Virus record (IMG/VR): IMGVR_UViG_3300020122_000238
Location: 211,301 to 275,300 of that record
Direction: 5' to 3' (one strand)
DNA: 64,000 nt
The position numbers and the translations under genes are program-made. The notes under the pieces are model-generated. The model did no database searches. It was not told where the DNA came from and saw nothing but the letters and a program-made list of their open reading frames with translations. Shown piece after piece: positions 6,450 through 45,946 of the stretch. Each line of letters begins with the position of its first letter. The stretch's first letter is position 1.

Positions 6450-7139
6450 TCAGATCGTCGGGATGGTCATCGACTCGACCGGCTCATCGACGGCCTCCGG
6501 CTTCAAGATGTCCGCGGTCGTGAAGCTCGGGATGTGCGTGCCGAACCAGCGAACAGCAACCCCCATGCGGAGCTGGCTCTCCTTGGAGCCGCCCTCGCAT
6601 GTGCCGCTCGCATAGGCCCGGAGACCCTCCAGCGTGCCAAGACGTGAGCACGAAGCCACCGACGACTTCATCAAGTGATGCGCCGCTCGAAAGCACTTCT
6701 TCCGATCCGCTAGCAGCTCGTCAGCCGTCCACCCAATCTGGACATCGGCTGCATCATCGTAGGGAGAAGCCCAGCGACTCAGGGTCTTGTTCCAGTCCCT
6801 CGTTCGCCCCTTACCCACGTTGATCTGCATCAAGCAGACGCTCTTCCCACCGTCGCCTCGAAGGAGGCCATTGTCCACCTTCGAGGCGAAACGACCCGAC
6901 TCAAAGTAGGCCCCTCCGAGCATTGCCGCAGCCGTGCGAACAAGCCCATGGTCTGGACCTTTTGCCGGGGTGCTGTAGAAAGAAGGCTCGCTCATGACCA
7001 CTTCAGCAAGGTCTTGGGCAGTCTGCTCATACCGTGCCTGGGTTTGCTCGGGAGTTTCGAGACCTCCCCCATATTGGGTGTGACCCGGCGGAGACTTAGT
7101 CACCAAGAACGTCAGGATCCAAGAAACAAGCAACTTCAC
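6450..7139 (-). CDS. secreted lysozyme/transglycosylase-fold protein
   Basis: Signal-peptide-like N-terminus after AGGAGG; FES...GDGGKSVCLMQIN resembles the ES/GLMQI motifs. Confidence 0.55.
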   Translation of the reverse strand: MKLLVSWILTFLVTKSPPGHTQYGGGLETPEQTQARYEQTAQDLAEVVMSEPSFYSTPAKGPDHGLVRTAAAMLGGAYFESGRFASKVDNGLLRGDGGKSVCLMQINVGKGRTRDWNKTLSRWASPYDDAADVQIGWTADELLADRKKCFRAAHHLMKSSVASCSRLGTLEGLRAYASGTCEGGSKESQLRMGVAVRWFGTHIPSFTTADILKPEAVDEPVESMTIPTI

Positions 7140-17946: not shown

Positions 17947-18565
17947 ATGACACTGAGCGACGAAGCACGACAACAAAAAATTAGAGCCAAAGCTGAAGGA
18001 CGAGCTTGGAGGGAAGCCAACCCCAAGCTCGTCCTTCAGGGTATCCGGCGGTGTGCCCGATGTGGTTATATCGGGCAGCAAGAAACAGATTTCATTGCTG
18101 ATGCTCGGTGTCAAGGGGGCTACCGAAATGTGCCGAAAGTGTATTCGGGAATCTTCAGTCAAGTATCGTGAGACAAATCACGACGAGCTTCGCGAACGAT
18201 TCAAGAAGTGGCACCAAGCGAACATGGAAACATACCGAGCTAGCAAAAGAGCGTCTAACAAGAAACATGCGGTAAAGATCGCAGTGCAGAAGCGATCCGC
18301 TCGTCTCAAGCGGAATTATGGCCTCACGCTTGAGGATTACGAACACATGCTAGCGGAACAGGGGGGTGCATGTGCGATCTGTCACGACACTCCAAACGGG
18401 CGTTGGACGAAATTGAATATCGACCATTGCCACATAACCGGAAAAGTCCGGGGCCTTCTTTGCGTCAACTGTAACCGGGCTCTGGGGTATCTCAAGGATG
18501 ACCCCTCTAGGGCGATCCGTTGTGCAGAGTATCTTCAAATTAGCAAAGAAGGGAAGCTTCCCTGA
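17947..18565 (+). pseudogene. endonuclease VII-like HNH gene, apparently frameshifted near 18127
   Basis: C-terminal CAIC..IDHCHITGKVRGLLCVNCNRALG in 18053-18565; N-terminal CARC part in another frame (17947-18171). Intact counterpart at 39079-39633. Confidence 0.7.
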
Positions 18566-18578
18566 TGGACACTATTCC

Positions 18579-18634
18579 CCCGCGGATCCCGATCCCAAGC
18601 CGTACTAGTACGGCTTGGGATCGGGATCCGCGGG
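18579..18634. repeat. 56-bp perfect palindrome between convergent genes
   Basis: CCCGCGGATCCCGATCCCAAGCCGTACT|AGTACGGCTTGGGATCGGGATCCGCGGG, no loop. Confidence 0.95.
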
Positions 18635-18642
18635 AAGCGGGC

Positions 18643-37878: not shown

Positions 37879-37904
37879 GAGGACCTCTTACACCAAGACG
37901 ACCC

Positions 37905-38234
37905 TCAAGAGAGGAAGAAAAAGTCCACCCTTTTGCCCTCGAACTCCCAAACCTCGACGATCTTCTCATCCTGAGACCCCAAGCTCCGCCACCTCGCCTG
38001 GACGATGTCCTTGTCGTAGAGCTTCTTCAGCCCAGCGCCTCGAAGGATCTGTTCCACCCAGAGCTTGTCCTGATCAGCGGACGACGCCGGGTAGACGATC
38101 AGATCCATGTCTTTGGTGCTCGACCCCTTGATCAAAACACTCCCCGTCAAGCCGAGATAGTACCTCGGCTTGAGAAGCTCGGAAAGCGTGAGAATGAAGG
38201 TCAGGCCGGAATCTCGATCCCAGGTGATAGGCAT
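37905..38234 (-). CDS. minimal nucleotidyltransferase (Pol-beta fold)-like protein
   Basis: LTGSV...KDMDLIV and GKRVDFFF match the hGS..DxD..D pattern. Confidence 0.55.
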   Translation of the reverse strand: MPITWDRDSGLTFILTLSELLKPRYYLGLTGSVLIKGSSTKDMDLIVYPASSADQDKLWVEQILRGAGLKKLYDKDIVQARWRSLGSQDEKIVEVWEFEGKRVDFFFLS

Positions 38235-38245
38235 CCCCAGGGGCT

Positions 38246-38272
38246 ACACCAACCAGGTCAGAGCGATTCCGT
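38246..38272 (-). pseudogene. relic original 3' end of the DUF3307 gene (GIALTWLV*)
   Basis: gga atc gct ctg acc tgg ttg gtg tag encodes the same peptide as the current DUF3307 terminus. Confidence 0.75.
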
Positions 38273-39070
38273 CTCAAGCCACCAAAAATGAGGCAAGTAC
38301 TCTGCGGGTACGAATGGAGATTGACGTCCAGCCACTCGCATAGGTTGGAAATTCACCAGAAGGCGAAGCAAGGTTTCGAACTCCCAAGGTTCTGGTGTTT
38401 TGGGGTCCTTGAGCCATTCTTCAATGAAACCGCGCTGCTCGTATCGAAATCTGGACAGAAAAACTCTTGTCTCAAGAAGTTTGTGCGCCGCGACCATCTG
38501 ATCATAGGCAAGAGCATCCAGTCGAGCCTGCATCTCTACAGAGATGCAGGCTTCCGGCACTCGAAGTCGGAAGCGTTCGGGAACAACAGTTTGAGGGTTC
38601 CAGTCTTCAAGACCCAAGGATGCTCGAAGTTCATTGATATAGGACAGCAGAGAAGAAGACAGACGAAACAATTCTCGTGTCCCCTCCACATAGATCCAGT
38701 CCGACGAAAACCGACTGTGGAGGAGTTTTTCGTCCTCCATGTCTCCTGTTACCCATGCCAGAAGCTCAATCTTGCGCGTCGATGACGACTGTATATTGTT
38801 CAGTCGTTGATGTATGTTGGTGGCAAATCCAATCTTTACCACGTCCGCATCAAGTCGAACAATGTATACCCCTGTAGCTTTTGGCCGAGGGTAAATAGGC
38901 GCGTCCAACTGTGCGGGCATCAATGTGTGCATGGCCCTGCGCCAATAAAAAAGACATGCTGCACATGTGAAGGATACCCAATATCCGTGCCCCTCATGCA
39001 CCTCAACGGTCGTTGAGGTGCATGAGGGGCACGGAGGGGTAAGCGCGGGCGGGAAGAAAACAAGAACCAC
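38258..39070 (-). CDS. GIY-YIG superfamily (T5orf172/MUG113-like) protein with N-terminal zinc ribbon
   Basis: CPSC...CAAC; GVYIV...VKIGFATNIHQRL...EKLLHSRF...ELF; AT-richer. Confidence 0.75.
   Translation of the reverse strand: MVLVFFPPALTPPCPSCTSTTVEVHEGHGYWVSFTCAACLFYWRRAMHTLMPAQLDAPIYPRPKATGVYIVRLDADVVKIGFATNIHQRLNNIQSSSTRKIELLAWVTGDMEDEKLLHSRFSSDWIYVEGTRELFRLSSSLLSYINELRASLGLEDWNPQTVVPERFRLRVPEACISVEMQARLDALAYDQMVAAHKLLETRVFLSRFRYEQRGFIEEWLKDPKTPEPWEFETLLRLLVNFQPMRVAGRQSPFVPAEYLPHFWWLETESL
38984..39035. repeat. 25-bp perfect inverted repeat inside the 5' coding region of the GIY-YIG gene
   Basis: TCCGTGCCCCTCATGCACCTCAACG-GT-CGTTGAGGTGCATGAGGGGCACGGA. Confidence 0.95.
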
Positions 39071-39078
39071 GAGGACAC

Positions 39079-39633
39079 CTACACCAAGGCTGCCCTCAAA
39101 TATCCGGTGGCAGTCTCCAGACGCTCCAAAGTGTCCCCCAGCAAACCAAGCGCCAGATTGCAGCTATGACAGAGAAGACCCCGGACCTTGCCCGTTGTGT
39201 GGCAGTGGTCGACGGCCCAAGAGGAGTTGTCCTTCTGTCCAGGTTTGTCTGCTCGGCAAATGGCACAACGTCCGCCTTGAGCTTCAAGCATCCTGGCGTA
39301 GTCGTCAGGGGTCAAGCCCTTCTTCTTGAGTCGTGAAACCCACGACTTGTAAGTGTTTTCGTTGCGATGCCCCTTCCGATACTCTTGGGCCTCAACGAGG
39401 TGCTCAGAATGGTACTTGCGCATCCGAGCCCGACGAGCATCAGAATTCTCGTGGTATCTGCGGTTGTTGTCCGAGATGCGCTTCTCGTGGTGCTTCCTGA
39501 AGTCGGCCTTCGATTGGAGGCGACGACAAGGCGGGCACCTCGATTGCGGCTTCATCACGCCGCGTTTCTTGATGAGACCGAAGACTTCCAACGGGAATGG
39601 GAGGGTACAGCCGGGGCAGATTTTCTCTTCCAT
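39079..39633 (-). CDS. endonuclease VII-like HNH protein
   Basis: CPGC...CPPC; QGGRCAIC...VDHCHTTGKVRGLLCHSCNLALG. Confidence 0.85.
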   Translation of the reverse strand: MEEKICPGCTLPFPLEVFGLIKKRGVMKPQSRCPPCRRLQSKADFRKHHEKRISDNNRRYHENSDARRARMRKYHSEHLVEAQEYRKGHRNENTYKSWVSRLKKKGLTPDDYARMLEAQGGRCAICRADKPGQKDNSSWAVDHCHTTGKVRGLLCHSCNLALGLLGDTLERLETATGYLRAALV

Positions 39634-39684
39634 TCTGACAAGCGGCTCGTATTAATGAGAAACCACGCCAGAATGATGAGAAAC

Positions 39685-40230
39685 CTAAAGCCAGGTCAAC
39701 GCGATGCCATTACAAATCAAATGGCAAGTATTATCACAAATGATGAGGAGCCAGACGGAGAGCCACATCGGCCGGTCCTTGTGGTAGCCCGTCCCGACGC
39801 AGTCCGACCACATATAGTTGCGGACCATGGGCTTCTCGCTGGGGATATCCGAAGGGTCCATGTGCGTGCAAGTGCCGCATTTACGACAGGCTTTGATACC
39901 GCTGGGAGGAGCATCATGCTCTGTGAGGCTCACGCAGACCGCACAGAAGGTATCCCGTCGGTAGGTCGGAGCAAGCCACTTCGGAGCGAGGAAGTTTTTC
40001 GCCCAACAGACGTAGCGGGCGAGCCGGAAGCGGTCGATGAGGAAGTGGGTGAGGATGATGAACGCGAGCGCAGGGAGCGAACGCGTGATGAAGAGGAACG
40101 GTAGGCTGTAGCTCAGCGCATGAGCCGCAGCCGGAACCGAACTCTTCGTTTTTTCTTGAGCTTGCCAATCACTTTGTAAAAGGTAGTCCCCCACCAAGTG
40201 ACAAAGAAGCGCATCAGCAGTTAGAAACAT
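39685..40230 (-). CDS. DUF3307 family membrane protein with inserted CxxC...CxxC
   Basis: HLVGDYLLQSDW, AHALSY, THFLIDRF, DNTCH. Confidence 0.8.
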   Translation of the reverse strand: MFLTADALLCHLVGDYLLQSDWQAQEKTKSSVPAAAHALSYSLPFLFITRSLPALAFIILTHFLIDRFRLARYVCWAKNFLAPKWLAPTYRRDTFCAVCVSLTEHDAPPSGIKACRKCGTCTHMDPSDIPSEKPMVRNYMWSDCVGTGYHKDRPMWLSVWLLIICDNTCHLICNGIALTWL

Positions 40231-40726
40231 TTTCTATCCTTTGATGGGGGCAAGTACCCCCAAATCGAGTCGACCAATTGCAGTTCATGCAGAGCACCGT
40301 ATACCCTTCCTGGGGCCATCCCTTGTTTCGTAGGTCCCGGTAGGTATTCGATCCCCCTCCCACCTGTTTGCGATGGGAGGCCCCGTCCCTATTCAAATGC
40401 TCCAGGGTCAAAAACTCTTCGCACTCCTCACCGCAGCACTTACAGGAGCCCCCATAAGCAGCAATCATCTCTCGCTTCAAACGGAGAAATGACGCGTGAC
40501 TGCTCTGTCGAGCTTCCTCTGGGTGCTCTTTTCTGAAGCGCAGTTGGGCTGCGTTATTTCTTTCGCGTTTTTTGGGGTCTGACAGGTATGTCTGCCTATA
40601 GACAGCCTGCTTTGTCTTGAAACAGGCTTTACACCAAGGTTGACGGCCATCCTTGGACCCCTTACGAGGCGGGAAAGTATCCGTGGGGAAGGGATCTCCA
40701 CAGGTGCGGCAGTTTTTGAGAGGCAT
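40214..40726 (-). CDS. HNH endonuclease-like protein
   Basis: CRTC...CKAC; CKCCG...LTLEH...VLCMNCN; AT-rich. Confidence 0.75.
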   Translation of the reverse strand: MPLKNCRTCGDPFPTDTFPPRKGSKDGRQPWCKACFKTKQAVYRQTYLSDPKKRERNNAAQLRFRKEHPEEARQSSHASFLRLKREMIAAYGGSCKCCGEECEEFLTLEHLNRDGASHRKQVGGGSNTYRDLRNKGWPQEGYTVLCMNCNWSTRFGGTCPHQRIENVSNC

Positions 40727-40763
40727 GTCTACAAACAGACAGCCGTATAATTGGAGTACCGCA

Positions 40764-40796
40764 ATCTCCGATGAGTTGAGCGGCAGTAAAAATCAT
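40764..40796 (-). pseudogene. relic original 5' end of the DUF3307 gene (MIFTAAQLIGD)
   Basis: Preceded by GGTGTA-N10; resembles the current start MFLTADALLCHLVGD. Confidence 0.6.
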
Positions 40797-40842
40797 ACCG
40801 CTCAACTACACCAGCTACGAGACAATCAGAGGGAAGCCCCGT

Positions 40843-41823
40843 TCAGTCCTCCCAGAGAGAATTGTCCCAGAGCTTCACATTCATCTCCCAGATCATGTCG
40901 TGACCCTCCAGCCCGGTCAGGTACTTCTCGGGGATGCCCTTGTAGCGGTAGAAAGCCCCCGCGAAGGATCCGGCGATGGCCGCTGTCGTATCCGTGTCTC
41001 CGCCCGCCCGAATGGCCGAGACAATCGCTTCCTCGTAGGTGTCCGTGAGCAGGAAGCAGGCGAACGCAGCCGGCACCGTCTGGAGAACATGGCCCTTGGT
41101 GCCAATCTCCAGAAGGAGAGTGGGCAGATTCACCCTCGGCTCCGTCACCGCTTCCACAGCCAGCCGGTTCAGCAGATCCTTGATCTGCGAAGACCGCAGC
41201 TTGGAAATGACCTCCGTGAAGGCATTCAGCTTGCTGTAGGTACAGTCCCGACGGCACAGGAGAGCAACCATCCCGGCGACGGCAGCGGAGCCTTCCTCGG
41301 CCTCCAGGGAGCGATGGGTGAGCTGGGCATCCCGACGAGCCACAGCCATCCCCTCATCGAGGGGCCGATGGCAGTAGTACATCCCAATCGGGGTCGCCCT
41401 CATCGCGGTCCCGTTGCCCTCGGACCCAACGACTCCGCACGTCTCGGGGTTTCCTTCGCGAGCGAAGGTCTCCAGGGCCTTCTTCGTCGTCCCACCAATG
41501 CCCCGGCAATCCACAGACTGGAACCAGGCGAGGTAAAACTGAGCCACGGTGACAGGGTCAAACCCCCGACGCTTCACCAGAGCCCCTGCGAGCGCGAGCG
41601 ACATCTGAGTGTCGTCCGTCCACTCCCCAGCTTCTTGGTCGTGGAAGCCCCCGCGGGAATCGCGGTACTCCCCCTTCCAGGTGAGAAGGTCCTGGTCGAC
41701 GATGTGGGACTTGCTGAAGGGCTTCTCGAACGGCGCCCCGAGAGCATCCCCAATGGCGAGCCCGACGAGCGGGGCGGGGTAATGCTGCATGATATCCGCC
41801 AATGCTTCCTTCGAAAGAGTCAT
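40843..41823 (-). CDS. ADP-ribosylglycohydrolase (DraG/ARH family)
   Basis: GLAIGDALG, WTDDTQM, GNGTAMR, LTH, GGDTDTTAAIAG. Confidence 0.92.
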   Translation of the reverse strand: MTLSKEALADIMQHYPAPLVGLAIGDALGAPFEKPFSKSHIVDQDLLTWKGEYRDSRGGFHDQEAGEWTDDTQMSLALAGALVKRRGFDPVTVAQFYLAWFQSVDCRGIGGTTKKALETFAREGNPETCGVVGSEGNGTAMRATPIGMYYCHRPLDEGMAVARRDAQLTHRSLEAEEGSAAVAGMVALLCRRDCTYSKLNAFTEVISKLRSSQIKDLLNRLAVEAVTEPRVNLPTLLLEIGTKGHVLQTVPAAFACFLLTDTYEEAIVSAIRAGGDTDTTAAIAGSFAGAFYRYKGIPEKYLTGLEGHDMIWEMNVKLWDNSLWED

Positions 41824-42227: not shown

Positions 42228-42900
42228 CTTTTGGGTTTACACCGAATTCGGGGGAATCGAGCTGGTCCCAAGATGTTGGACGTCGATTGTACTCCGCCTC
42301 AGCCCGACGGCGCTTTTTCTCTTCTCGACGCCGGACCTGGTCATCGGTGAGAGACGGAGTATTTGCAGCTTGAAGCTCGACGCCATCAACCCAAGGGGGG
42401 CGTTGGGGCGTATATTCCTCAAGAACCACGTCAACCGCAAAAGACAGCGTTGCAACCTGTACTTCTCTTGGGGTTCTTTCGGCGGAACCAGCGAAGTTCA
42501 CCTCGAAGGGACCATCTTGCCGTTCTTGCAGGATGGTAAAGGCATCCTGAAATAAAGTGATATCTCTTTCGATGATGGTGTGTGTACCCCCCAAAATGTG
42601 TACTCCAAACCTGTCAATGGAAGAGACCATTGACAGGTTACATACAAGTCCAGCTTGTCGGAGCTGTCGGCTGGCTTCAAAAGGAGAAATAGGCACTACT
42701 ACTTCCGACACTGGAGCAGGCTGCGGCGGAGGAGACCAACCATGGGGCTTGCGAATCACCCGCGTGAGCACCCCGTTCTGCTCTGAGAAGGCCTGGCTGC
42801 TTTGAATCGCCTCGTGCTCATGCACAGAAGCGAGAGACGGAAGGTCAACCCACCCGGCACGGGCCGCACGAGACTGGACGCAGTAGAAGCGAGAAGGCAT
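42220..42900 (-). CDS. hypothetical protein with near-C-terminal tag
   Basis: RRPTSWDQLDSPEF; GGTGTA-N10-ATG. Confidence 0.75.
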   Translation of the reverse strand: MPSRFYCVQSRAARAGWVDLPSLASVHEHEAIQSSQAFSEQNGVLTRVIRKPHGWSPPPQPAPVSEVVVPISPFEASRQLRQAGLVCNLSMVSSIDRFGVHILGGTHTIIERDITLFQDAFTILQERQDGPFEVNFAGSAERTPREVQVATLSFAVDVVLEEYTPQRPPWVDGVELQAANTPSLTDDQVRRREEKKRRRAEAEYNRRPTSWDQLDSPEFGVNPKGD

Positions 42901-44297: not shown

Positions 44298-45140
44298 CTA
44301 CTGCGCTTCGACGGCCCAGCTCGTTCCGGGGACGACGCGCTCGAACAGGTTGGTGTTCTGCCCCTCGTAGCCGAGACGAGCGAAGTTCCGGATGGGGAAG
44401 TACCAGTCCCCATTGCGCATGGTCCGCATGGTCTTCACCCCTGCCACGCGAGCCGCGAGATAGGGCTGGACGCTGCGGTCCATGCTCCGGTCCGTATAGT
44501 AGACCGGGCTCGCTTGAGACATCGCGCGAAGCCCCGTCCCGACGATGAGGGAGTGGTCCGTGGCCACGTCGGCATTGAGATTCGGGGGACGACCGTCGTG
44601 CCCATCCAGACCCGGGAGGAAGAGATTCGCGGTGTCAGTCGGCGTGTACCACCAGAGGAGGGGCTCCGCGCTCACATGCCCGCTCCAGCAACACAGAGCG
44701 AACTGCGAGTAGGGGTAGAGCCTGGCGTAGGCGTCGAAGATGGCCTGGTTGATCTTCGGCCGCTTGGCCATGGGCACGAACCCGAGCGCGGACGGGATGG
44801 CGCTCGCATCTTCCGCGAGGACGACCGTGTAGGACCCGCTGTCGAAGACCTGGATCCCCTTGAGACCATCGGACCCCAGCGAGCGCGTGTCGCTCCGCGT
44901 CTTGGGGGTGATGGCTTCCACCATATCCTTGAGGCAGTTCGGAGCCGAGCGCGTGTCGATGATGTTCTCTGGGCCCATCGGGGTCTTCGAGGGGATCGGC
45001 AAAAGCATCGCATTCGGCCCGACGCTCACAGCCATGTTGCTGTAGCCGAGCGTGTGCATCACCCCGCCCTTGGGGTCAGGCAGCTCGGCAGTGTAGAGGA
45101 TGGTCTTTGAGAGGGTGGCGGGAGCGAGGGTGCAACACAT
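44298..45140 (-). CDS. conserved hypothetical protein
   Basis: MCCTLAPA...GPNAMLLP...CCW...PLLWWY.P...PGLDGHDG; very GC3-rich. Confidence 0.75.
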   Translation of the reverse strand: MCCTLAPATLSKTILYTAELPDPKGGVMHTLGYSNMAVSVGPNAMLLPIPSKTPMGPENIIDTRSAPNCLKDMVEAITPKTRSDTRSLGSDGLKGIQVFDSGSYTVVLAEDASAIPSALGFVPMAKRPKINQAIFDAYARLYPYSQFALCCWSGHVSAEPLLWWYTPTDTANLFLPGLDGHDGRPPNLNADVATDHSLIVGTGLRAMSQASPVYYTDRSMDRSVQPYLAARVAGVKTMRTMRNGDWYFPIRNFARLGYEGQNTNLFERVVPGTSWAVEAQ

Positions 45141-45163
45141 GGAGATTCGATACTTTCGAGGGT

Positions 45164-45946
45164 TCAGATCAGACGAAGAGAGGGAATCGTCCGCTCTTCC
45201 TGAGAGACGATGTTTTCTTCTTGGGCCTTCTTGAGGAAGCTCAGAGTCGGAGTGAAGGTCTTCTCCAGCTCCCGACGAGAGTTGTTGAGTGAGGTGATCT
45301 TGGACAGGAGGTCGCTCTGGGTCGTGATGGTCACCGCGTCGACCTTGTACCCCTTCTGCGCTTCTTGAGCGAGGAGCCGAAAGCTTGCAGAGATCGCCCG
45401 ACAGTCCCCGAGGTCTCGCCGAATCGCCTTGAAGTAGAAGTCGTTGCTGATGGCCGTGGTGACGAACGCGACGATCATGCTGACGATCACGATCCAGAGG
45501 CGGTAGTTTTCGGGGCCCCATCCGTGATGGGCAAGGATGCCGATGACGGGGACGAAGCTCACGAGCAACCCGTAGAAGATCCACATGCGGGTCTGCTTCT
45601 CCGAATCGTGTTTCGTGAGCTGGTCGTCGTGCATCATCATCGACGCGGTCGCCTTGATCCCGCAGTCTGTCTCCATCTCGAAACAGAACTGTTGGAAGGC
45701 CTCGCGGTCCTTCAGCTCAGGCGGAACGTTCGCCGCCACACGAGCCGCCTCTTTGGCTCGTGCGGCCTCTTCCTGCTTCTGGACTGCGGACTGTGAGGCG
45801 ACCAGCTCCGCGTACCGATCGTCGGCCTCCTGCTTGACGTTGAGGACAAGATTCACGTCGAGATCCTGGAGCAGCTTGTGGAAGCTGCTCCGCGCCTCTT
45901 GGACGAGAGAGGCGCAGCGGTCTTCGAGGCTCTTGGGTGTGGGCAT
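45164..45946 (-). CDS. coiled-coil two-TM membrane protein
   Basis: N-terminal coiled coil, two TM helices, helical C-terminus; GGTGTA-N10-ATG. Confidence 0.75.
   Translation of the reverse strand: MPTPKSLEDRCASLVQEARSSFHKLLQDLDVNLVLNVKQEADDRYAELVASQSAVQKQEEAARAKEAARVAANVPPELKDREAFQQFCFEMETDCGIKATASMMMHDDQLTKHDSEKQTRMWIFYGLLVSFVPVIGILAHHGWGPENYRLWIVIVSMIVAFVTTAISNDFYFKAIRRDLGDCRAISASFRLLAQEAQKGYKVDAVTITTQSDLLSKITSLNNSRRELEKTFTPTLSFLKKAQEENIVSQEERTIPSLRLI

What the first reader, a model, noticed from the sequence alone, without database searches (positions are those of the whole stretch)
38246..40812. DUF3307 gene invaded at both ends by endonuclease cassettes that supply recoded termini and leave relics
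Seen: the active DUF3307 ORF (39685-40230, minus) has AT-rich codons only in its first ~30 codons (ttt cta act gct gat...tta caa agt...gaa aaa) and last ~17 codons (att tgt gat aat act...), around a GC3-rich core. Beyond the downstream EndoVII plus GIY-YIG pair, 38246-38272 encodes GIALTWLV* in different codons, matching the active end NGIALTWL*, and still carries the GGTGTA element for the next gene. Beyond the upstream HNH, 40764-40796 encodes MIFTAAQLIGD behind its own GGTGTA-N10, matching the active start MFLTADALLCHLVGD. Established: intron-less homing endonucleases can carry a recoded, cleavage-resistant copy of their target gene end. Inference: two independent such invasions of one gene, one of them a two-nuclease cassette.
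Basis: partly seen in the sequence, partly recalled or inferred. Interest (0 to 1): 0.8.

Follow-up and report, generated by a model that had tools for sequence, protein, structure and literature searches.

The report
Nuclease cassettes replaced both ends of gene
In a soil jumbo phage, two separate selfish nuclease cassettes have inserted at the two ends of one small conserved gene, each bringing its own copy of the gene end and leaving the original end behind as a short relic, an arrangement described so far mainly in fungal mitochondria.

Summary
The window is part of a 275 kb IMG/VR phage contig. On the minus strand it reads ARH gene | orphan start signal plus 12-codon DUF3307 start relic | HNH | intact DUF3307 | EndoVII | T5orf172/GIY-YIG | 8-codon DUF3307 end relic | next gene.

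- **3' relic.** It ties for the best of 109,043 six-frame positions against a family profile. The 5' relic ranks 4th-5th.
- **Codon composition.** DUF3307 has GC3 of 0.38, 0.80 and 0.44 in codons 1-37, 38-163 and 164-181 (permutation p about 0.0005).
- **HNH cassette.** Its closest homologs (62-66%) lie directly upstream of DUF3307 genes or remnants in four other genomic contexts. They share a 5' leader that begins exactly where the window's relic ends.
- **EndoVII plus GIY pair.** It recurs downstream of DUF3307 in contig L220, while the syntenic contig L221 lacks it (an empty site). L221 also shares gene order with the window and has no nucleases.
- **Diverged codons.** Codons 163-174, AT-rich in the window, are a divergence hot spot between L220 and L221 (p = 6.5e-5).

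Cleavage, immunity and the donors remain untested. The closest known parallel is the mitochondrial mobile-ORF gene hybrid. I score this as a new variant of a known kind.

The parts
40843..41823 (-). ADP-ribosylglycohydrolase gene. It is the native upstream neighbour (GC3 0.79).
   Evidence: Pfam PF03747 at 6e-68. It is 49% identical to the ARH of the syntenic contig L221.
40797..40812 (-). Orphaned native start signal: GGTGTA plus a 10-nt spacer.
   Evidence: This is the genome-wide gene-start motif. Here it leads only into a 44-codon ORF that overlaps the HNH start.
40761..40796 (-). 5' relic of the native DUF3307 start, reading MIFTAAQLIGD(C).
   Evidence: PSSM rank 4-5 of about 110,000 positions. 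The TAAQL start variant exists in the family, in P0097. The relic ends exactly where the conserved HNH leader begins.
40727..40760 (-). Conserved 5' leader of the HNH cassette.
   Evidence: It aligns with the sequence upstream of the HNH homologs in L131, L134, L136 and L219 (alignment A3).
40214..40726 (-). HNH-type homing endonuclease gene (GC3 0.58). Its last 17 nt overlap the DUF3307 start.
   Evidence: PHROG HNH endonuclease at 2e-12. The Cys4, EH and N motifs are invariant. The closest homologs sit upstream of DUF3307 elsewhere.
40120..40230 (-). DUF3307 codons 1-37: the AT3-rich replacement 5' end (GC3 0.38). An AAGGA sequence, not GGTGTA, precedes its start.
   Evidence: Fisher test against the core gives p = 2e-6.
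39742..40119 (-). DUF3307 core, codons 38-163 (GC3 0.80, like the flanking native genes).
   Evidence: It is 58% identical to the DUF3307 of syntenic L221.
39709..39741 (-). DUF3307 codons 164-174: the AT3-rich segment (GC3 0.18) and candidate nuclease target region.
   Evidence: The same codons differ at 14 of 36 nt between occupied L220 and empty L221, against 39 of 348 elsewhere in the gene (p = 6.5e-5).
39685..39708 (-). Active DUF3307 end, GIALTWL plus stop. This is the copy duplicated by the 3' relic.
39634..39684 (-). Spacer and EndoVII 5' leader, partly conserved with L220. It contains a 10-nt direct repeat.
   Evidence: Alignment A2.
39079..39633 (-). Endonuclease VII-motif nuclease gene (GC3 0.68).
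   Evidence: Pfam PF02945 at 2e-23. It is 80% identical to the EndoVII of L220, with dN/dS 0.05.
38258..39070 (-). T5orf172/GIY-YIG-clan nuclease gene with an N-terminal zinc ribbon (GC3 0.51). Its last codons and its stop are read from the relic sequence.
   Evidence: Pfam PF10544/PF13455. It is 51% identical to the GIY of L220. Conserved motif residues are shown, and the end of the ORF is compared with L220.
38244..38273 (-). 3' relic of the native DUF3307 end, reading (D)GIALTWLV plus stop. It overlaps the GGTGTA start motif of the next gene.
   Evidence: It ties for rank 1 of 109,043 positions. It differs from the active copy at 5 of 21 nt, all synonymous.
37905..38234 (-). Native downstream gene (109 aa, GC3 0.78, no family match).

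Best explanation
**What it is.** DUF3307 is a native gene of this phage, sitting just downstream of the ARH gene as it does in the distant syntenic relative L221. Two different free-standing homing-endonuclease cassettes, each specialised on one end of DUF3307, entered it from other phages.

- **Upstream cassette.** It consists of a conserved leader, an HNH gene, and the first roughly 37 codons of the donor's DUF3307. The HNH stop overlaps those codons.
- **Downstream cassette.** It consists of the donor's DUF3307 tail, an EndoVII-motif nuclease and a T5orf172/GIY-YIG nuclease.

**How it most likely happened (inferred).** In each case a nuclease from a co-infecting donor cut the resident gene near its end. 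The broken end on the core side invaded the donor's homologous DUF3307, and copying ran outward through the donor's gene end and the nuclease gene(s). The donor's outer neighbours were not homologous to this phage's neighbours, so the far side was sealed by a non-homologous or microhomology join to the other broken end. That end still carried the resident gene's extreme terminus.

**Result.** The product is a functional mosaic gene with a native core and donor-derived, differently coded ends. The native first 12 and last 8-9 codons are stranded outside the cassettes.

**Why the relics persist (inferred).** They carry signals that are still used. The 5' relic holds the native GGTGTA-N10-ATG start. 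The 3' relic supplies the stop of the GIY ORF and the start motif of the next gene.

**Shown versus inferred.**
- Shown: the anatomy, its statistical significance, the association of each cassette with DUF3307 in other genomes, and an empty site in a relative.
- Inferred: cleavage specificity, immunity of the recoded segments, the repair pathway, and the order and independence of the two events.
For: **Anatomy and statistics**.

**HNH cassette.**
- The five closest homolog contexts (62-67% aa) include four that lie immediately upstream of DUF3307 and overlap it or a remnant of it. Their upstream neighbours differ: Cpn10, a divergent gene, CoaE.
- Homologs at 46-49% identity are not linked to DUF3307.
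- The shared leader starts right after the window's relic.

**EndoVII plus GIY cassette.**
- The same gene order is found in L220 (EndoVII 80%, GIY 51%, DUF3307 57.5% aa identity).
- L221 is 83% identical to L220 on both sides but lacks the 1.4 kb pair, which in L220 sits exactly between the DUF3307 stop and the next gene's start.

**DUF3307 is native here.** L221 shares g226-g134-ARH-DUF3307 order with the window and has no nucleases.

**The two cassettes are separate units.** HNH-bearing loci lack EndoVII/GIY, and L220 lacks HNH.

**Cassette end.** The GIY ORF reads past its natural stop position into the relic.

**Composition.**
- GC3 of the nucleases (0.51-0.68) and of the gene ends (0.38, 0.44) is below that of the core and flanks (0.78-0.84).
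- Relatives without nucleases lack the strong N-terminal drop.

**Candidate target.** Codons 163-174 are a divergence hot spot between occupied and empty alleles. Both occupied alleles share the rare Cys165.

**The nucleases are maintained.** They are under purifying selection with intact motifs.

**Precedent.** The architecture is documented in mitochondria (PMC3630166; PMC6279837).
Against: - **No close relative and no donor.** The best DUF3307 homolog is 59% identical. The best match to the N-terminal 40 residues is 80%. Protein-level segment comparison shows no chimerism.
- **No empty alleles in reads.** Public reads show only the occupied junction, at very low depth.
- **The 5' relic is imperfect.** It lacks four codons, including the invariant His11. 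It is itself AT3-rich (3 of 10 codons), so AT-rich first codons alone do not mark foreign DNA.
- **The last 7 codons of the active gene are GC3-rich**, which does not fit a simple low-GC donor.
- **The all-synonymous pattern has another explanation.** It could also arise if the 3' relic is frozen by its overlapping functions while only the active copy drifted under selection.
- **The empty relative is not flat either.** L221 also has modest GC3 in its tail (0.55 and 0.29).
- **No relics elsewhere.** No relic is seen in L131, L134 or L220, so relic formation is not a regular feature of these cassettes.
- **Timing is unresolved.** Synonymous sites are saturated between the window and L220, so relative timing cannot be read.
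Confidence: 0.72

Rival explanations
1. Single-event 'HEG island' import. The whole block HNH-DUF3307-EndoVII-GIY came from one donor and replaced the interior of the resident DUF3307 through two non-homologous joins. On this view the active gene is entirely foreign, and its mosaic composition was inherited from the donor.
For: - Relics of both native ends flank the block symmetrically.
- HEG-bracketed islands have been proposed to be mobilised together in phages (PMC10448857).
- A single event is formally more parsimonious than two.
Against: - The core GC3 (0.80) matches the native flanking genes (0.78-0.84). Every nuclease and both gene ends are lower.
- In all other loci found, the two cassettes occur separately.
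- Two independent non-homologous joins would have to fall exactly at the two extremities of the resident gene. The one-ended homologous model explains that placement directly.
Confidence: 0.13
2. In-situ duplication. The nucleases inserted with a short local duplication of the target (a repair footprint). The copies then diverged in place, so no donor-derived gene end is involved.
For: - The duplicated stretch at the 3' end is short (7-8 codons), and the active copy of it is GC3-rich like native DNA.
- Both copies share the rare Thr179.
- A relic constrained by overlapping functions would force the differences to be synonymous.
Against: - An insertion inside the coding region would inactivate the gene unless a replacement end arrived at the same time.
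- This model does not explain the AT3-rich codons 164-174 and 1-37, or the 4-of-8 amino-acid difference between the 5' relic and the active start.
- Five random substitutions are all synonymous with probability of about 3e-4.
Confidence: 0.07
3. No relics at all. The two short matches are chance or assembly artefacts, and the nucleases are ordinary intergenic free-standing HEGs.
For: - The 5' match is short and gapped, and 2-3 unrelated positions in the window score higher.
- The contig is a metagenome assembly. Independent reads cover only one junction.
Against: - The 3' match is 7 of 7 residues plus a stop, tied for rank 1 of 109,043 positions, and lies at exactly the expected place.
- The 5' match starts at an orphan start motif and ends at the conserved cassette leader.
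- All ORFs are intact and overlap coherently across the junctions.
Confidence: 0.04

Closest known systems
Mobile endonuclease ORFs (mORFs) that create 'gene hybrids' in fungal mitochondria. Examples are Allomyces macrogynus atp6 (Paquin et al. 1994, as cited in PMC3630166), Glomus atp6, atp9, cox2 and nad3 (PMC3630166), and the cob and atp6 C-terminal duplications in Endoconidiophora (PMC6279837).
   Same: A free-standing GIY-YIG or other endonuclease ORF is inserted at the 3' end of a conserved gene. It brings a foreign, mostly synonymously different copy of the C-terminal coding segment in frame with the native core. The native C-terminus is left stranded downstream of the nuclease ORF.
   Different: - The host here is a bacteriophage, not an organelle.
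- The nucleases are HNH, EndoVII-motif and T5orf172 types rather than LAGLIDADG.
- The relics are only 8-12 codons long.
- One gene is hit at both ends. The 5'-end version (new start codon region supplied, native start stranded upstream) did not turn up in the papers I searched.
- The cassettes are not fused in frame to the gene.
Intronless homing by free-standing HEGs of T4-like phages (SegB, SegF, SegG, MobE; PMC2988022, PMC2330249, PMC2790892).
   Same: - The nuclease gene sits beside its target gene rather than in an intron.
- Cleavage of the HEG-less allele leads to co-conversion of adjacent target-gene sequence.
- The HEG-bearing allele differs at the target site.
   Different: In T4-type homing both flanks are homologous, so the product is clean, as in the L220/L221 pair. 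No duplicated gene end or relic is reported in the papers I read. Cleavage was not tested here.
F-CphI / DHHRN family of EndoVII-motif homing endonucleases (PMC6083498).
   Same: The window's 39079-39633 protein has a C-terminal Endonuclease_7 catalytic domain behind an N-terminal extension, and it is free-standing next to a conserved phage gene.
   Different: The target gene is different, and activity is unknown here. Membership in the homing clade of that family's tree was not tested.
T5orf172 HEGs and 'HEG islands' of ICP1 and other phages (PMC10448857).
   Same: A T5orf172/MUG113-domain nuclease with a zinc-finger-type extra domain sits next to a conserved gene. Nucleases bracket a gene on both sides.
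   Different: The bracketed unit is a single 181-codon gene rather than an operon-sized island. Gene-end relics are not described in that paper's main text.
mobE splitting nrdA in Aeromonas phage Aeh1 (cited in PMC10448857).
   Same: An HNH HEG has inserted within the boundaries of a phage gene without destroying its function.
   Different: In Aeh1 the gene is split into two expressed polypeptides. Here the gene stays whole because the cassette supplies a replacement end.

Membership tests
Free-standing homing endonuclease gene (HEG) | Encodes a nuclease of a known HEG catalytic class. | tested here: met
   - HNH: PHROG 2e-12, invariant motif.
- Endonuclease_7: Pfam 2e-23.
- T5orf172/MUG113: Pfam above cut-off, conserved GxY...KIG, Arg and Glu.
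Free-standing homing endonuclease gene (HEG) | Sporadic presence or absence at one conserved site next to a conserved target gene. | tested here: met
   - L220 (occupied) against L221 (empty) for EndoVII plus GIY.
- HNH is present upstream of DUF3307 in L131, L134, L136 and the window, and absent in L129, L220, L221, L223 and L224.
Free-standing homing endonuclease gene (HEG) | Site-specific cleavage of the HEG-less allele and unidirectional gene conversion. | not testable with these tools
   This needs purified proteins or co-infection crosses.
Free-standing homing endonuclease gene (HEG) | The HEG-bearing allele differs at the target site (immunity). | tested here: inconclusive
   Codons 163-174 are a divergence hot spot between L220 and L221 (p = 6.5e-5) and are AT3-rich in the window. 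The cleavage site itself is unknown.
mORF-type gene hybrid (mitochondrial model) | An inserted copy of the gene end is in frame with the native core, keeping the gene intact. | tested here: met
   The 181-aa protein is full length, with all invariant family residues present.
mORF-type gene hybrid (mitochondrial model) | The native end is displaced to the far side of the endonuclease ORF. | tested here: met
   The 3' relic is at 38244-38273 and the 5' relic at 40761-40796.
mORF-type gene hybrid (mitochondrial model) | The native (displaced) end is closer to near relatives than the inserted end is. | tested here: inconclusive
   There is no close relative. Against L221 the relic matches 14 of 21 nt and the active copy 13 of 21 nt (sequences), which does not discriminate.
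mORF-type gene hybrid (mitochondrial model) | The hybrid is transcribed and the relic is not part of the functional mRNA. | not testable with these tools
   No RNA run holds this phage.
DUF3307 (PF11750) | Match to the family model above the curated cut-off, with the conserved His, Asp, Gln and Asn positions. | tested here: met
   27.6 bits against a cut-off of 23. There are 33 invariant columns shared with 21 homologs.
DHHRN (F-CphI) EndoVII-motif HEG family | Conserved EndoVII catalytic residues in a C-terminal domain. | tested here: met
   The Pfam domain covers residues 104-180. The VDHCH...VRG...CN stretch is conserved with L220. Placement in that family's tree was not tested.

The most novel reading that the evidence does not exclude
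The relic boundaries may record where the double-strand breaks were: around codon 16 for the HNH and at codon 174/175 for the 3' pair. If so, free-standing phage homing endonucleases can cross into genomes with no shared neighbouring genes by using the target gene itself as their only homology arm. The route would be one-ended invasion followed by end joining, carrying along a portable, differently coded and presumably cleavage-immune copy of the gene end. That would make these cassettes the phage counterpart of mitochondrial mobile ORFs. It would include a 5'-end version I did not find described, in which the stranded native start signal now heads a short upstream ORF that overlaps, and may throttle, the HNH start.
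Probability: 0.35. Interest if true: 0.75.

Novelty: new variant of a known kind. Interest (0 to 1): 0.6.

Why it matters
Free-standing homing endonucleases are abundant in phages, but how they move between phages that do not share gene order is poorly documented. This locus preserves the footprints of two such moves in one gene: stranded native ends, mosaic codon usage, and cassette leaders shared with unrelated contigs.

- **A defined family-target pair.** It identifies an HNH family tied to the 5' end of DUF3307 and an EndoVII plus T5orf172 pair tied to its 3' end. Natural occupied and empty alleles (L220 and L221) are available for cleavage assays.
- **A link between fields.** If the inferred route is right, it connects phage intronless homing with the mitochondrial gene-hybrid phenomenon.
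- **A practical warning.** Gene ends next to nucleases can be foreign, which matters for phage phylogenies and recombination analyses.
- **A hint about DUF3307.** Its function is unknown, but it appears conserved enough across large phages to support dedicated parasites.

Tried and rejected
- **Close relatives in annotated phage records.** Only short or distant hits were found.
- **Close relatives in IMG/VR through DUF3307.** The next best is 50% identical and there is no synteny.
- **Relatives of the three nucleases in IMG/VR, and of EndoVII in JGI metagenomes.** None at 58% identity or below lies next to DUF3307.
- **Donor search with the N-terminal 40 residues alone.** The best hit is 80% identical.
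- **Protein-level chimerism test by segment identity.** Uninformative, because all segments are about 60% identical to all homologs.
- **Nucleotide-level donor test.** An L136-type allele is nearest for codons 9-24 but only at about 82%, which is not decisive.
- **Empty alleles in public reads.** Three soil runs hold the phage at very low depth. Only the occupied DUF3307/EndoVII junction is covered, and no skipping joints appear at the cassettes.
- **A second DUF3307 copy suggested by PSSM hits near 6500.** Rejected. Both hits lie inside one unrelated ORF and there is no HMM match.
- **Rare Gln23 as a marker of HNH-linked alleles.** Rejected. P0002, P0015 and P0093 carry it without HNH.
- **EndoVII as the more recent arrival, on the basis of 80% identity.** Not supportable, because synonymous sites are near saturation for all three genes.
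- **Sigma-70-like promoter inside the AT-rich tail.** None found.
- **Function of DUF3307.** No NCBIfam match and no solved-structure match.
- **Relics beside the second EndoVII gene at 18 kb.** None found.


Full report
**Source and layout.** The window is part of IMGVR_UViG_3300020122_000238, a 275 kb phage contig. On the minus strand the region reads:
- ADP-ribosylglycohydrolase gene (ARH), 40843-41823;
- a 116-nt spacer;
- an HNH-type ORF, 40214-40726;
- DUF3307, 39685-40230;
- an Endonuclease_7 ORF, 39079-39633;
- a T5orf172/MUG113 (GIY-YIG clan) ORF, 38258-39070;
- a 109-aa gene, 37905-38234.

The DUF3307 product is full length. It carries every invariant residue seen in an alignment with 21 homologs and in column counts over 119 homologs.

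**Codon composition.**
- GC3 is 0.78-0.84 in the flanking genes and 0.51-0.68 in the three nuclease genes.
- Within DUF3307 the best three-segment model puts boundaries after codons 37 and 163, with GC3 of 0.38, 0.80 and 0.44. Only 1 of 2000 permutations reaches that fit.
- The low tail is really codons 164-174 (2 of 11 GC3). The last seven codons are GC3-rich.
- In 29 genes of the window that start behind the GGTGTA motif, codons 2-11 and 12-37 average 0.65 and 0.68 against 0.72 for the rest. The drop in DUF3307 is therefore unusual.
- GC-rich relatives without flanking nucleases show little or no N-terminal drop: L002 0.72, L004 0.75, L005 0.91, L129 0.72, L220 0.74, L221 0.74.

**The relics.**
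Against a PSSM built from 119 homologs, excluding the window's protein, it ties with the active end for rank 1 of 109,043 six-frame positions. It differs from the active copy at 5 of 21 nt, all synonymous. Five random substitutions are all synonymous with probability of about 3e-4.
- *Caveat on that test.* The relic also encodes the last codons and stop of the GIY ORF and the GGTGTA start motif of the next gene. It may be frozen while only the active copy changed under selection.
- *5' relic.* It reads MIFTAAQLIGD(C) at 40761-40796. It starts at an ATG 10 nt after a GGTGTA and ranks 4th-5th of about 110,000 positions. Two or three higher chance hits exist; those near 6500 lie in an unrelated ORF.
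- *Its flaws and supports.* It lacks four codons, including the invariant His11, so it has decayed or been trimmed. The TAAQL start occurs naturally in the family, in P0097.
- *Start motif.* GGTGTA followed by 9-11 nt and a start codon is this phage's general gene-start signal: 67 copies against about 29 expected. At 40812 it leads only into a 44-codon ORF overlapping the HNH start, which is what a truncated gene start would look like.

**Comparative evidence for the HNH cassette.**
- The closest HNH homologs in a 5.8-billion-protein collection are 62-68% identical.
- Their contigs show the HNH ORF immediately upstream of a DUF3307 gene and overlapping its start in L131-133 (behind Cpn10), L134 (behind a divergent gene) and L136 (behind CoaE).
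- In L135 the HNH is followed by a broken DUF3307.
- L219 is the one exception.
- Homologs at 45-49% identity (L019, L217, L218) are not linked to DUF3307.
- A DNA alignment shows a shared leader of about 34 nt upstream of the HNH start in the window, L131, L134, L136 and L219. In the window it begins immediately after the relic's GAT TGC.
- The HNH stop overlaps the first codons of DUF3307 in every case. The nuclease gene and the gene's 5' end are thus physically one unit.
- The active DUF3307 start in the window is preceded by AAGGA, not by the resident GGTGTA signal.

**Comparative evidence for the EndoVII plus GIY cassette.**
- The only close relative of the GIY protein among 1.84 billion representatives (P0186, 51%) lies on contig L220. 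There the order is DUF3307, EndoVII, GIY.
- Identities to the window are EndoVII 80%, GIY 51% and DUF3307 57.5%. Part of the EndoVII leader is conserved.
- Contig L221 (144 kb) is collinear with L220 at 78-86% nucleotide identity on both sides but lacks the two nucleases. In L220 they sit exactly between the DUF3307 stop and the next gene's start, with no relic. This is a natural occupied/empty pair.
- L221 also shares the order g226, g134, ARH, DUF3307 with the window, at 51, 40, 49 and 58% aa identity. DUF3307 is therefore ancestral at this locus, and L221 represents the nuclease-free state at both ends.
- In the window the GIY ORF runs past the position of its natural stop in L220 and terminates inside the relic. 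This places the cassette's right edge at the relic's first base.
- HNH-bearing loci lack EndoVII and GIY, and L220 lacks HNH. The two cassettes are separate elements.

**Candidate target region.**
- Between occupied L220 and empty L221, the 12 codons equivalent to window codons 163-174 differ at 14 of 36 nt. The rest of the conserved gene differs at 39 of 348 nt (Fisher p = 6.5e-5).
- The final seven codons are nearly identical between L220 and L221.
- These are the same codons that are AT3-rich in the window.
- Both occupied alleles encode the rare Cys165, found in 6 of 119 homologs.
- This fits a nuclease recognition or cleavage site just upstream of the insertion point that is altered in cassette-bearing genomes. 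Cleavage itself is untested.

**State of the nucleases.**
- All three have intact catalytic motifs.
- They are under purifying selection between lineages. EndoVII has dN/dS 0.05, and the others have saturated synonymous sites with pN of 0.27-0.32.
- Because synonymous sites are saturated, none of the shared history is recent and the order of events cannot be read.

**Mechanism (inferred).**
- In L220/L221 both flanks are homologous and the insertion is clean, as in T4-type intronless homing (PMC2988022).
- In the window the outer neighbours (ARH, the 109-aa gene) differ from those of every cassette-bearing contig found. Only DUF3307 itself could serve as homology.
- A break near a gene end would be repaired by invasion of the donor's DUF3307 from the core side. 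Copying would run out through the donor's gene end and nuclease genes, and a non-homologous join to the other broken end would finish the repair.
- That sequence yields exactly the observed structure: native core, donor end, cassette, then the stranded native terminus.
- The same architecture at C-termini is documented for mobile endonuclease ORFs in fungal mitochondria. The documented features are an inserted C-terminus, a mobile ORF, a displaced native C-terminus, and mainly synonymous divergence (PMC3630166; PMC6279837).
- I found no phage description of such relics in the papers searched. That is a limited search, not proof of absence.

**Limits.**
- No close relative or donor exists in the collections searched.
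- Public reads hold the phage at very low depth and show only the occupied DUF3307/EndoVII junction.
- A single-event import of the whole block, in-situ duplication, and artefact remain possible at low probability.

**Verdict.** This is a phage example, at both ends of one gene, of a phenomenon known from organelles, with a defined nuclease-target association that can be tested directly.

Noticed in passing
Whole window, for example 38245-38250, 40807-40812, 37889-37894, 42238-42243 (minus strand); also L134, L135, L136, L220: GGTGTA followed by 9-11 nt and ATG/GTG is a recurrent gene-start signal. There are 67 copies against about 29 expected, and 29 precede ORFs of 90 aa or more. It often overlaps the previous gene's stop as GGTGTAA or GGTGTAG. 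The spacing does not fit a Shine-Dalgarno site. The same motif occurs before genes in the related contigs.
   Followed up: partly
window 17947-18565 (+) and about 18590-18640: A second Endonuclease_7 ORF (Pfam 3e-24, 35% identical to the one at 39079-39633). Its zinc-finger N-terminus seems to lie in a different frame (ORF 17947-18171), which suggests a frameshift. A long perfect palindrome follows it. No gene-end relics were found beside it.
   Followed up: partly
L135:600-800: An HNH homolog (63% identical) is followed by a broken DUF3307. A VGDY fragment sits in one frame and the C-terminal 30 residues in another, with the middle of the gene missing. The HNH has outlived its target gene here.
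   Followed up: partly
window 39655-39685 (minus strand): A 10-nt direct repeat GGTTTCTCAT occurs twice, 21 nt apart. The first copy overlaps the DUF3307 stop and the second lies in the EndoVII leader conserved with L220. The window has 15 extra nt here relative to L220, possibly a junction footprint.
   Followed up: no
window 40727-40760; L131, L134, L219 upstream of HNH: The conserved HNH leader contains the palindrome ACGGCCGT (ACGGCTGT in the window). It could be a small hairpin or a protein-binding site that regulates the nuclease.
   Followed up: no
window 40662-40796 (minus strand): The 5' relic opens a 44-codon ORF from the native start signal. It overlaps the first 21 codons of the HNH gene in another frame, so it could act as an upstream ORF limiting HNH translation.
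   Followed up: no
window 44298-45521 (minus strand): In a crude ORF call, the first 30 codons have GC3 of 0.33 against 0.75 for the rest of the gene, the only other gene with a drop as large as DUF3307. The start codon was not verified and there is no Pfam match.
   Followed up: no
L129, L136, L221 and other DUF3307 loci: DUF3307 genes in large phage contigs often lie among nucleotide- and cofactor-metabolism genes: NT5C, thymidine kinase, phosphoribosyltransferase, CoaE, NUDIX and ADP-ribosylglycohydrolase. The family has no solved structure and no NCBIfam name.
   Followed up: no
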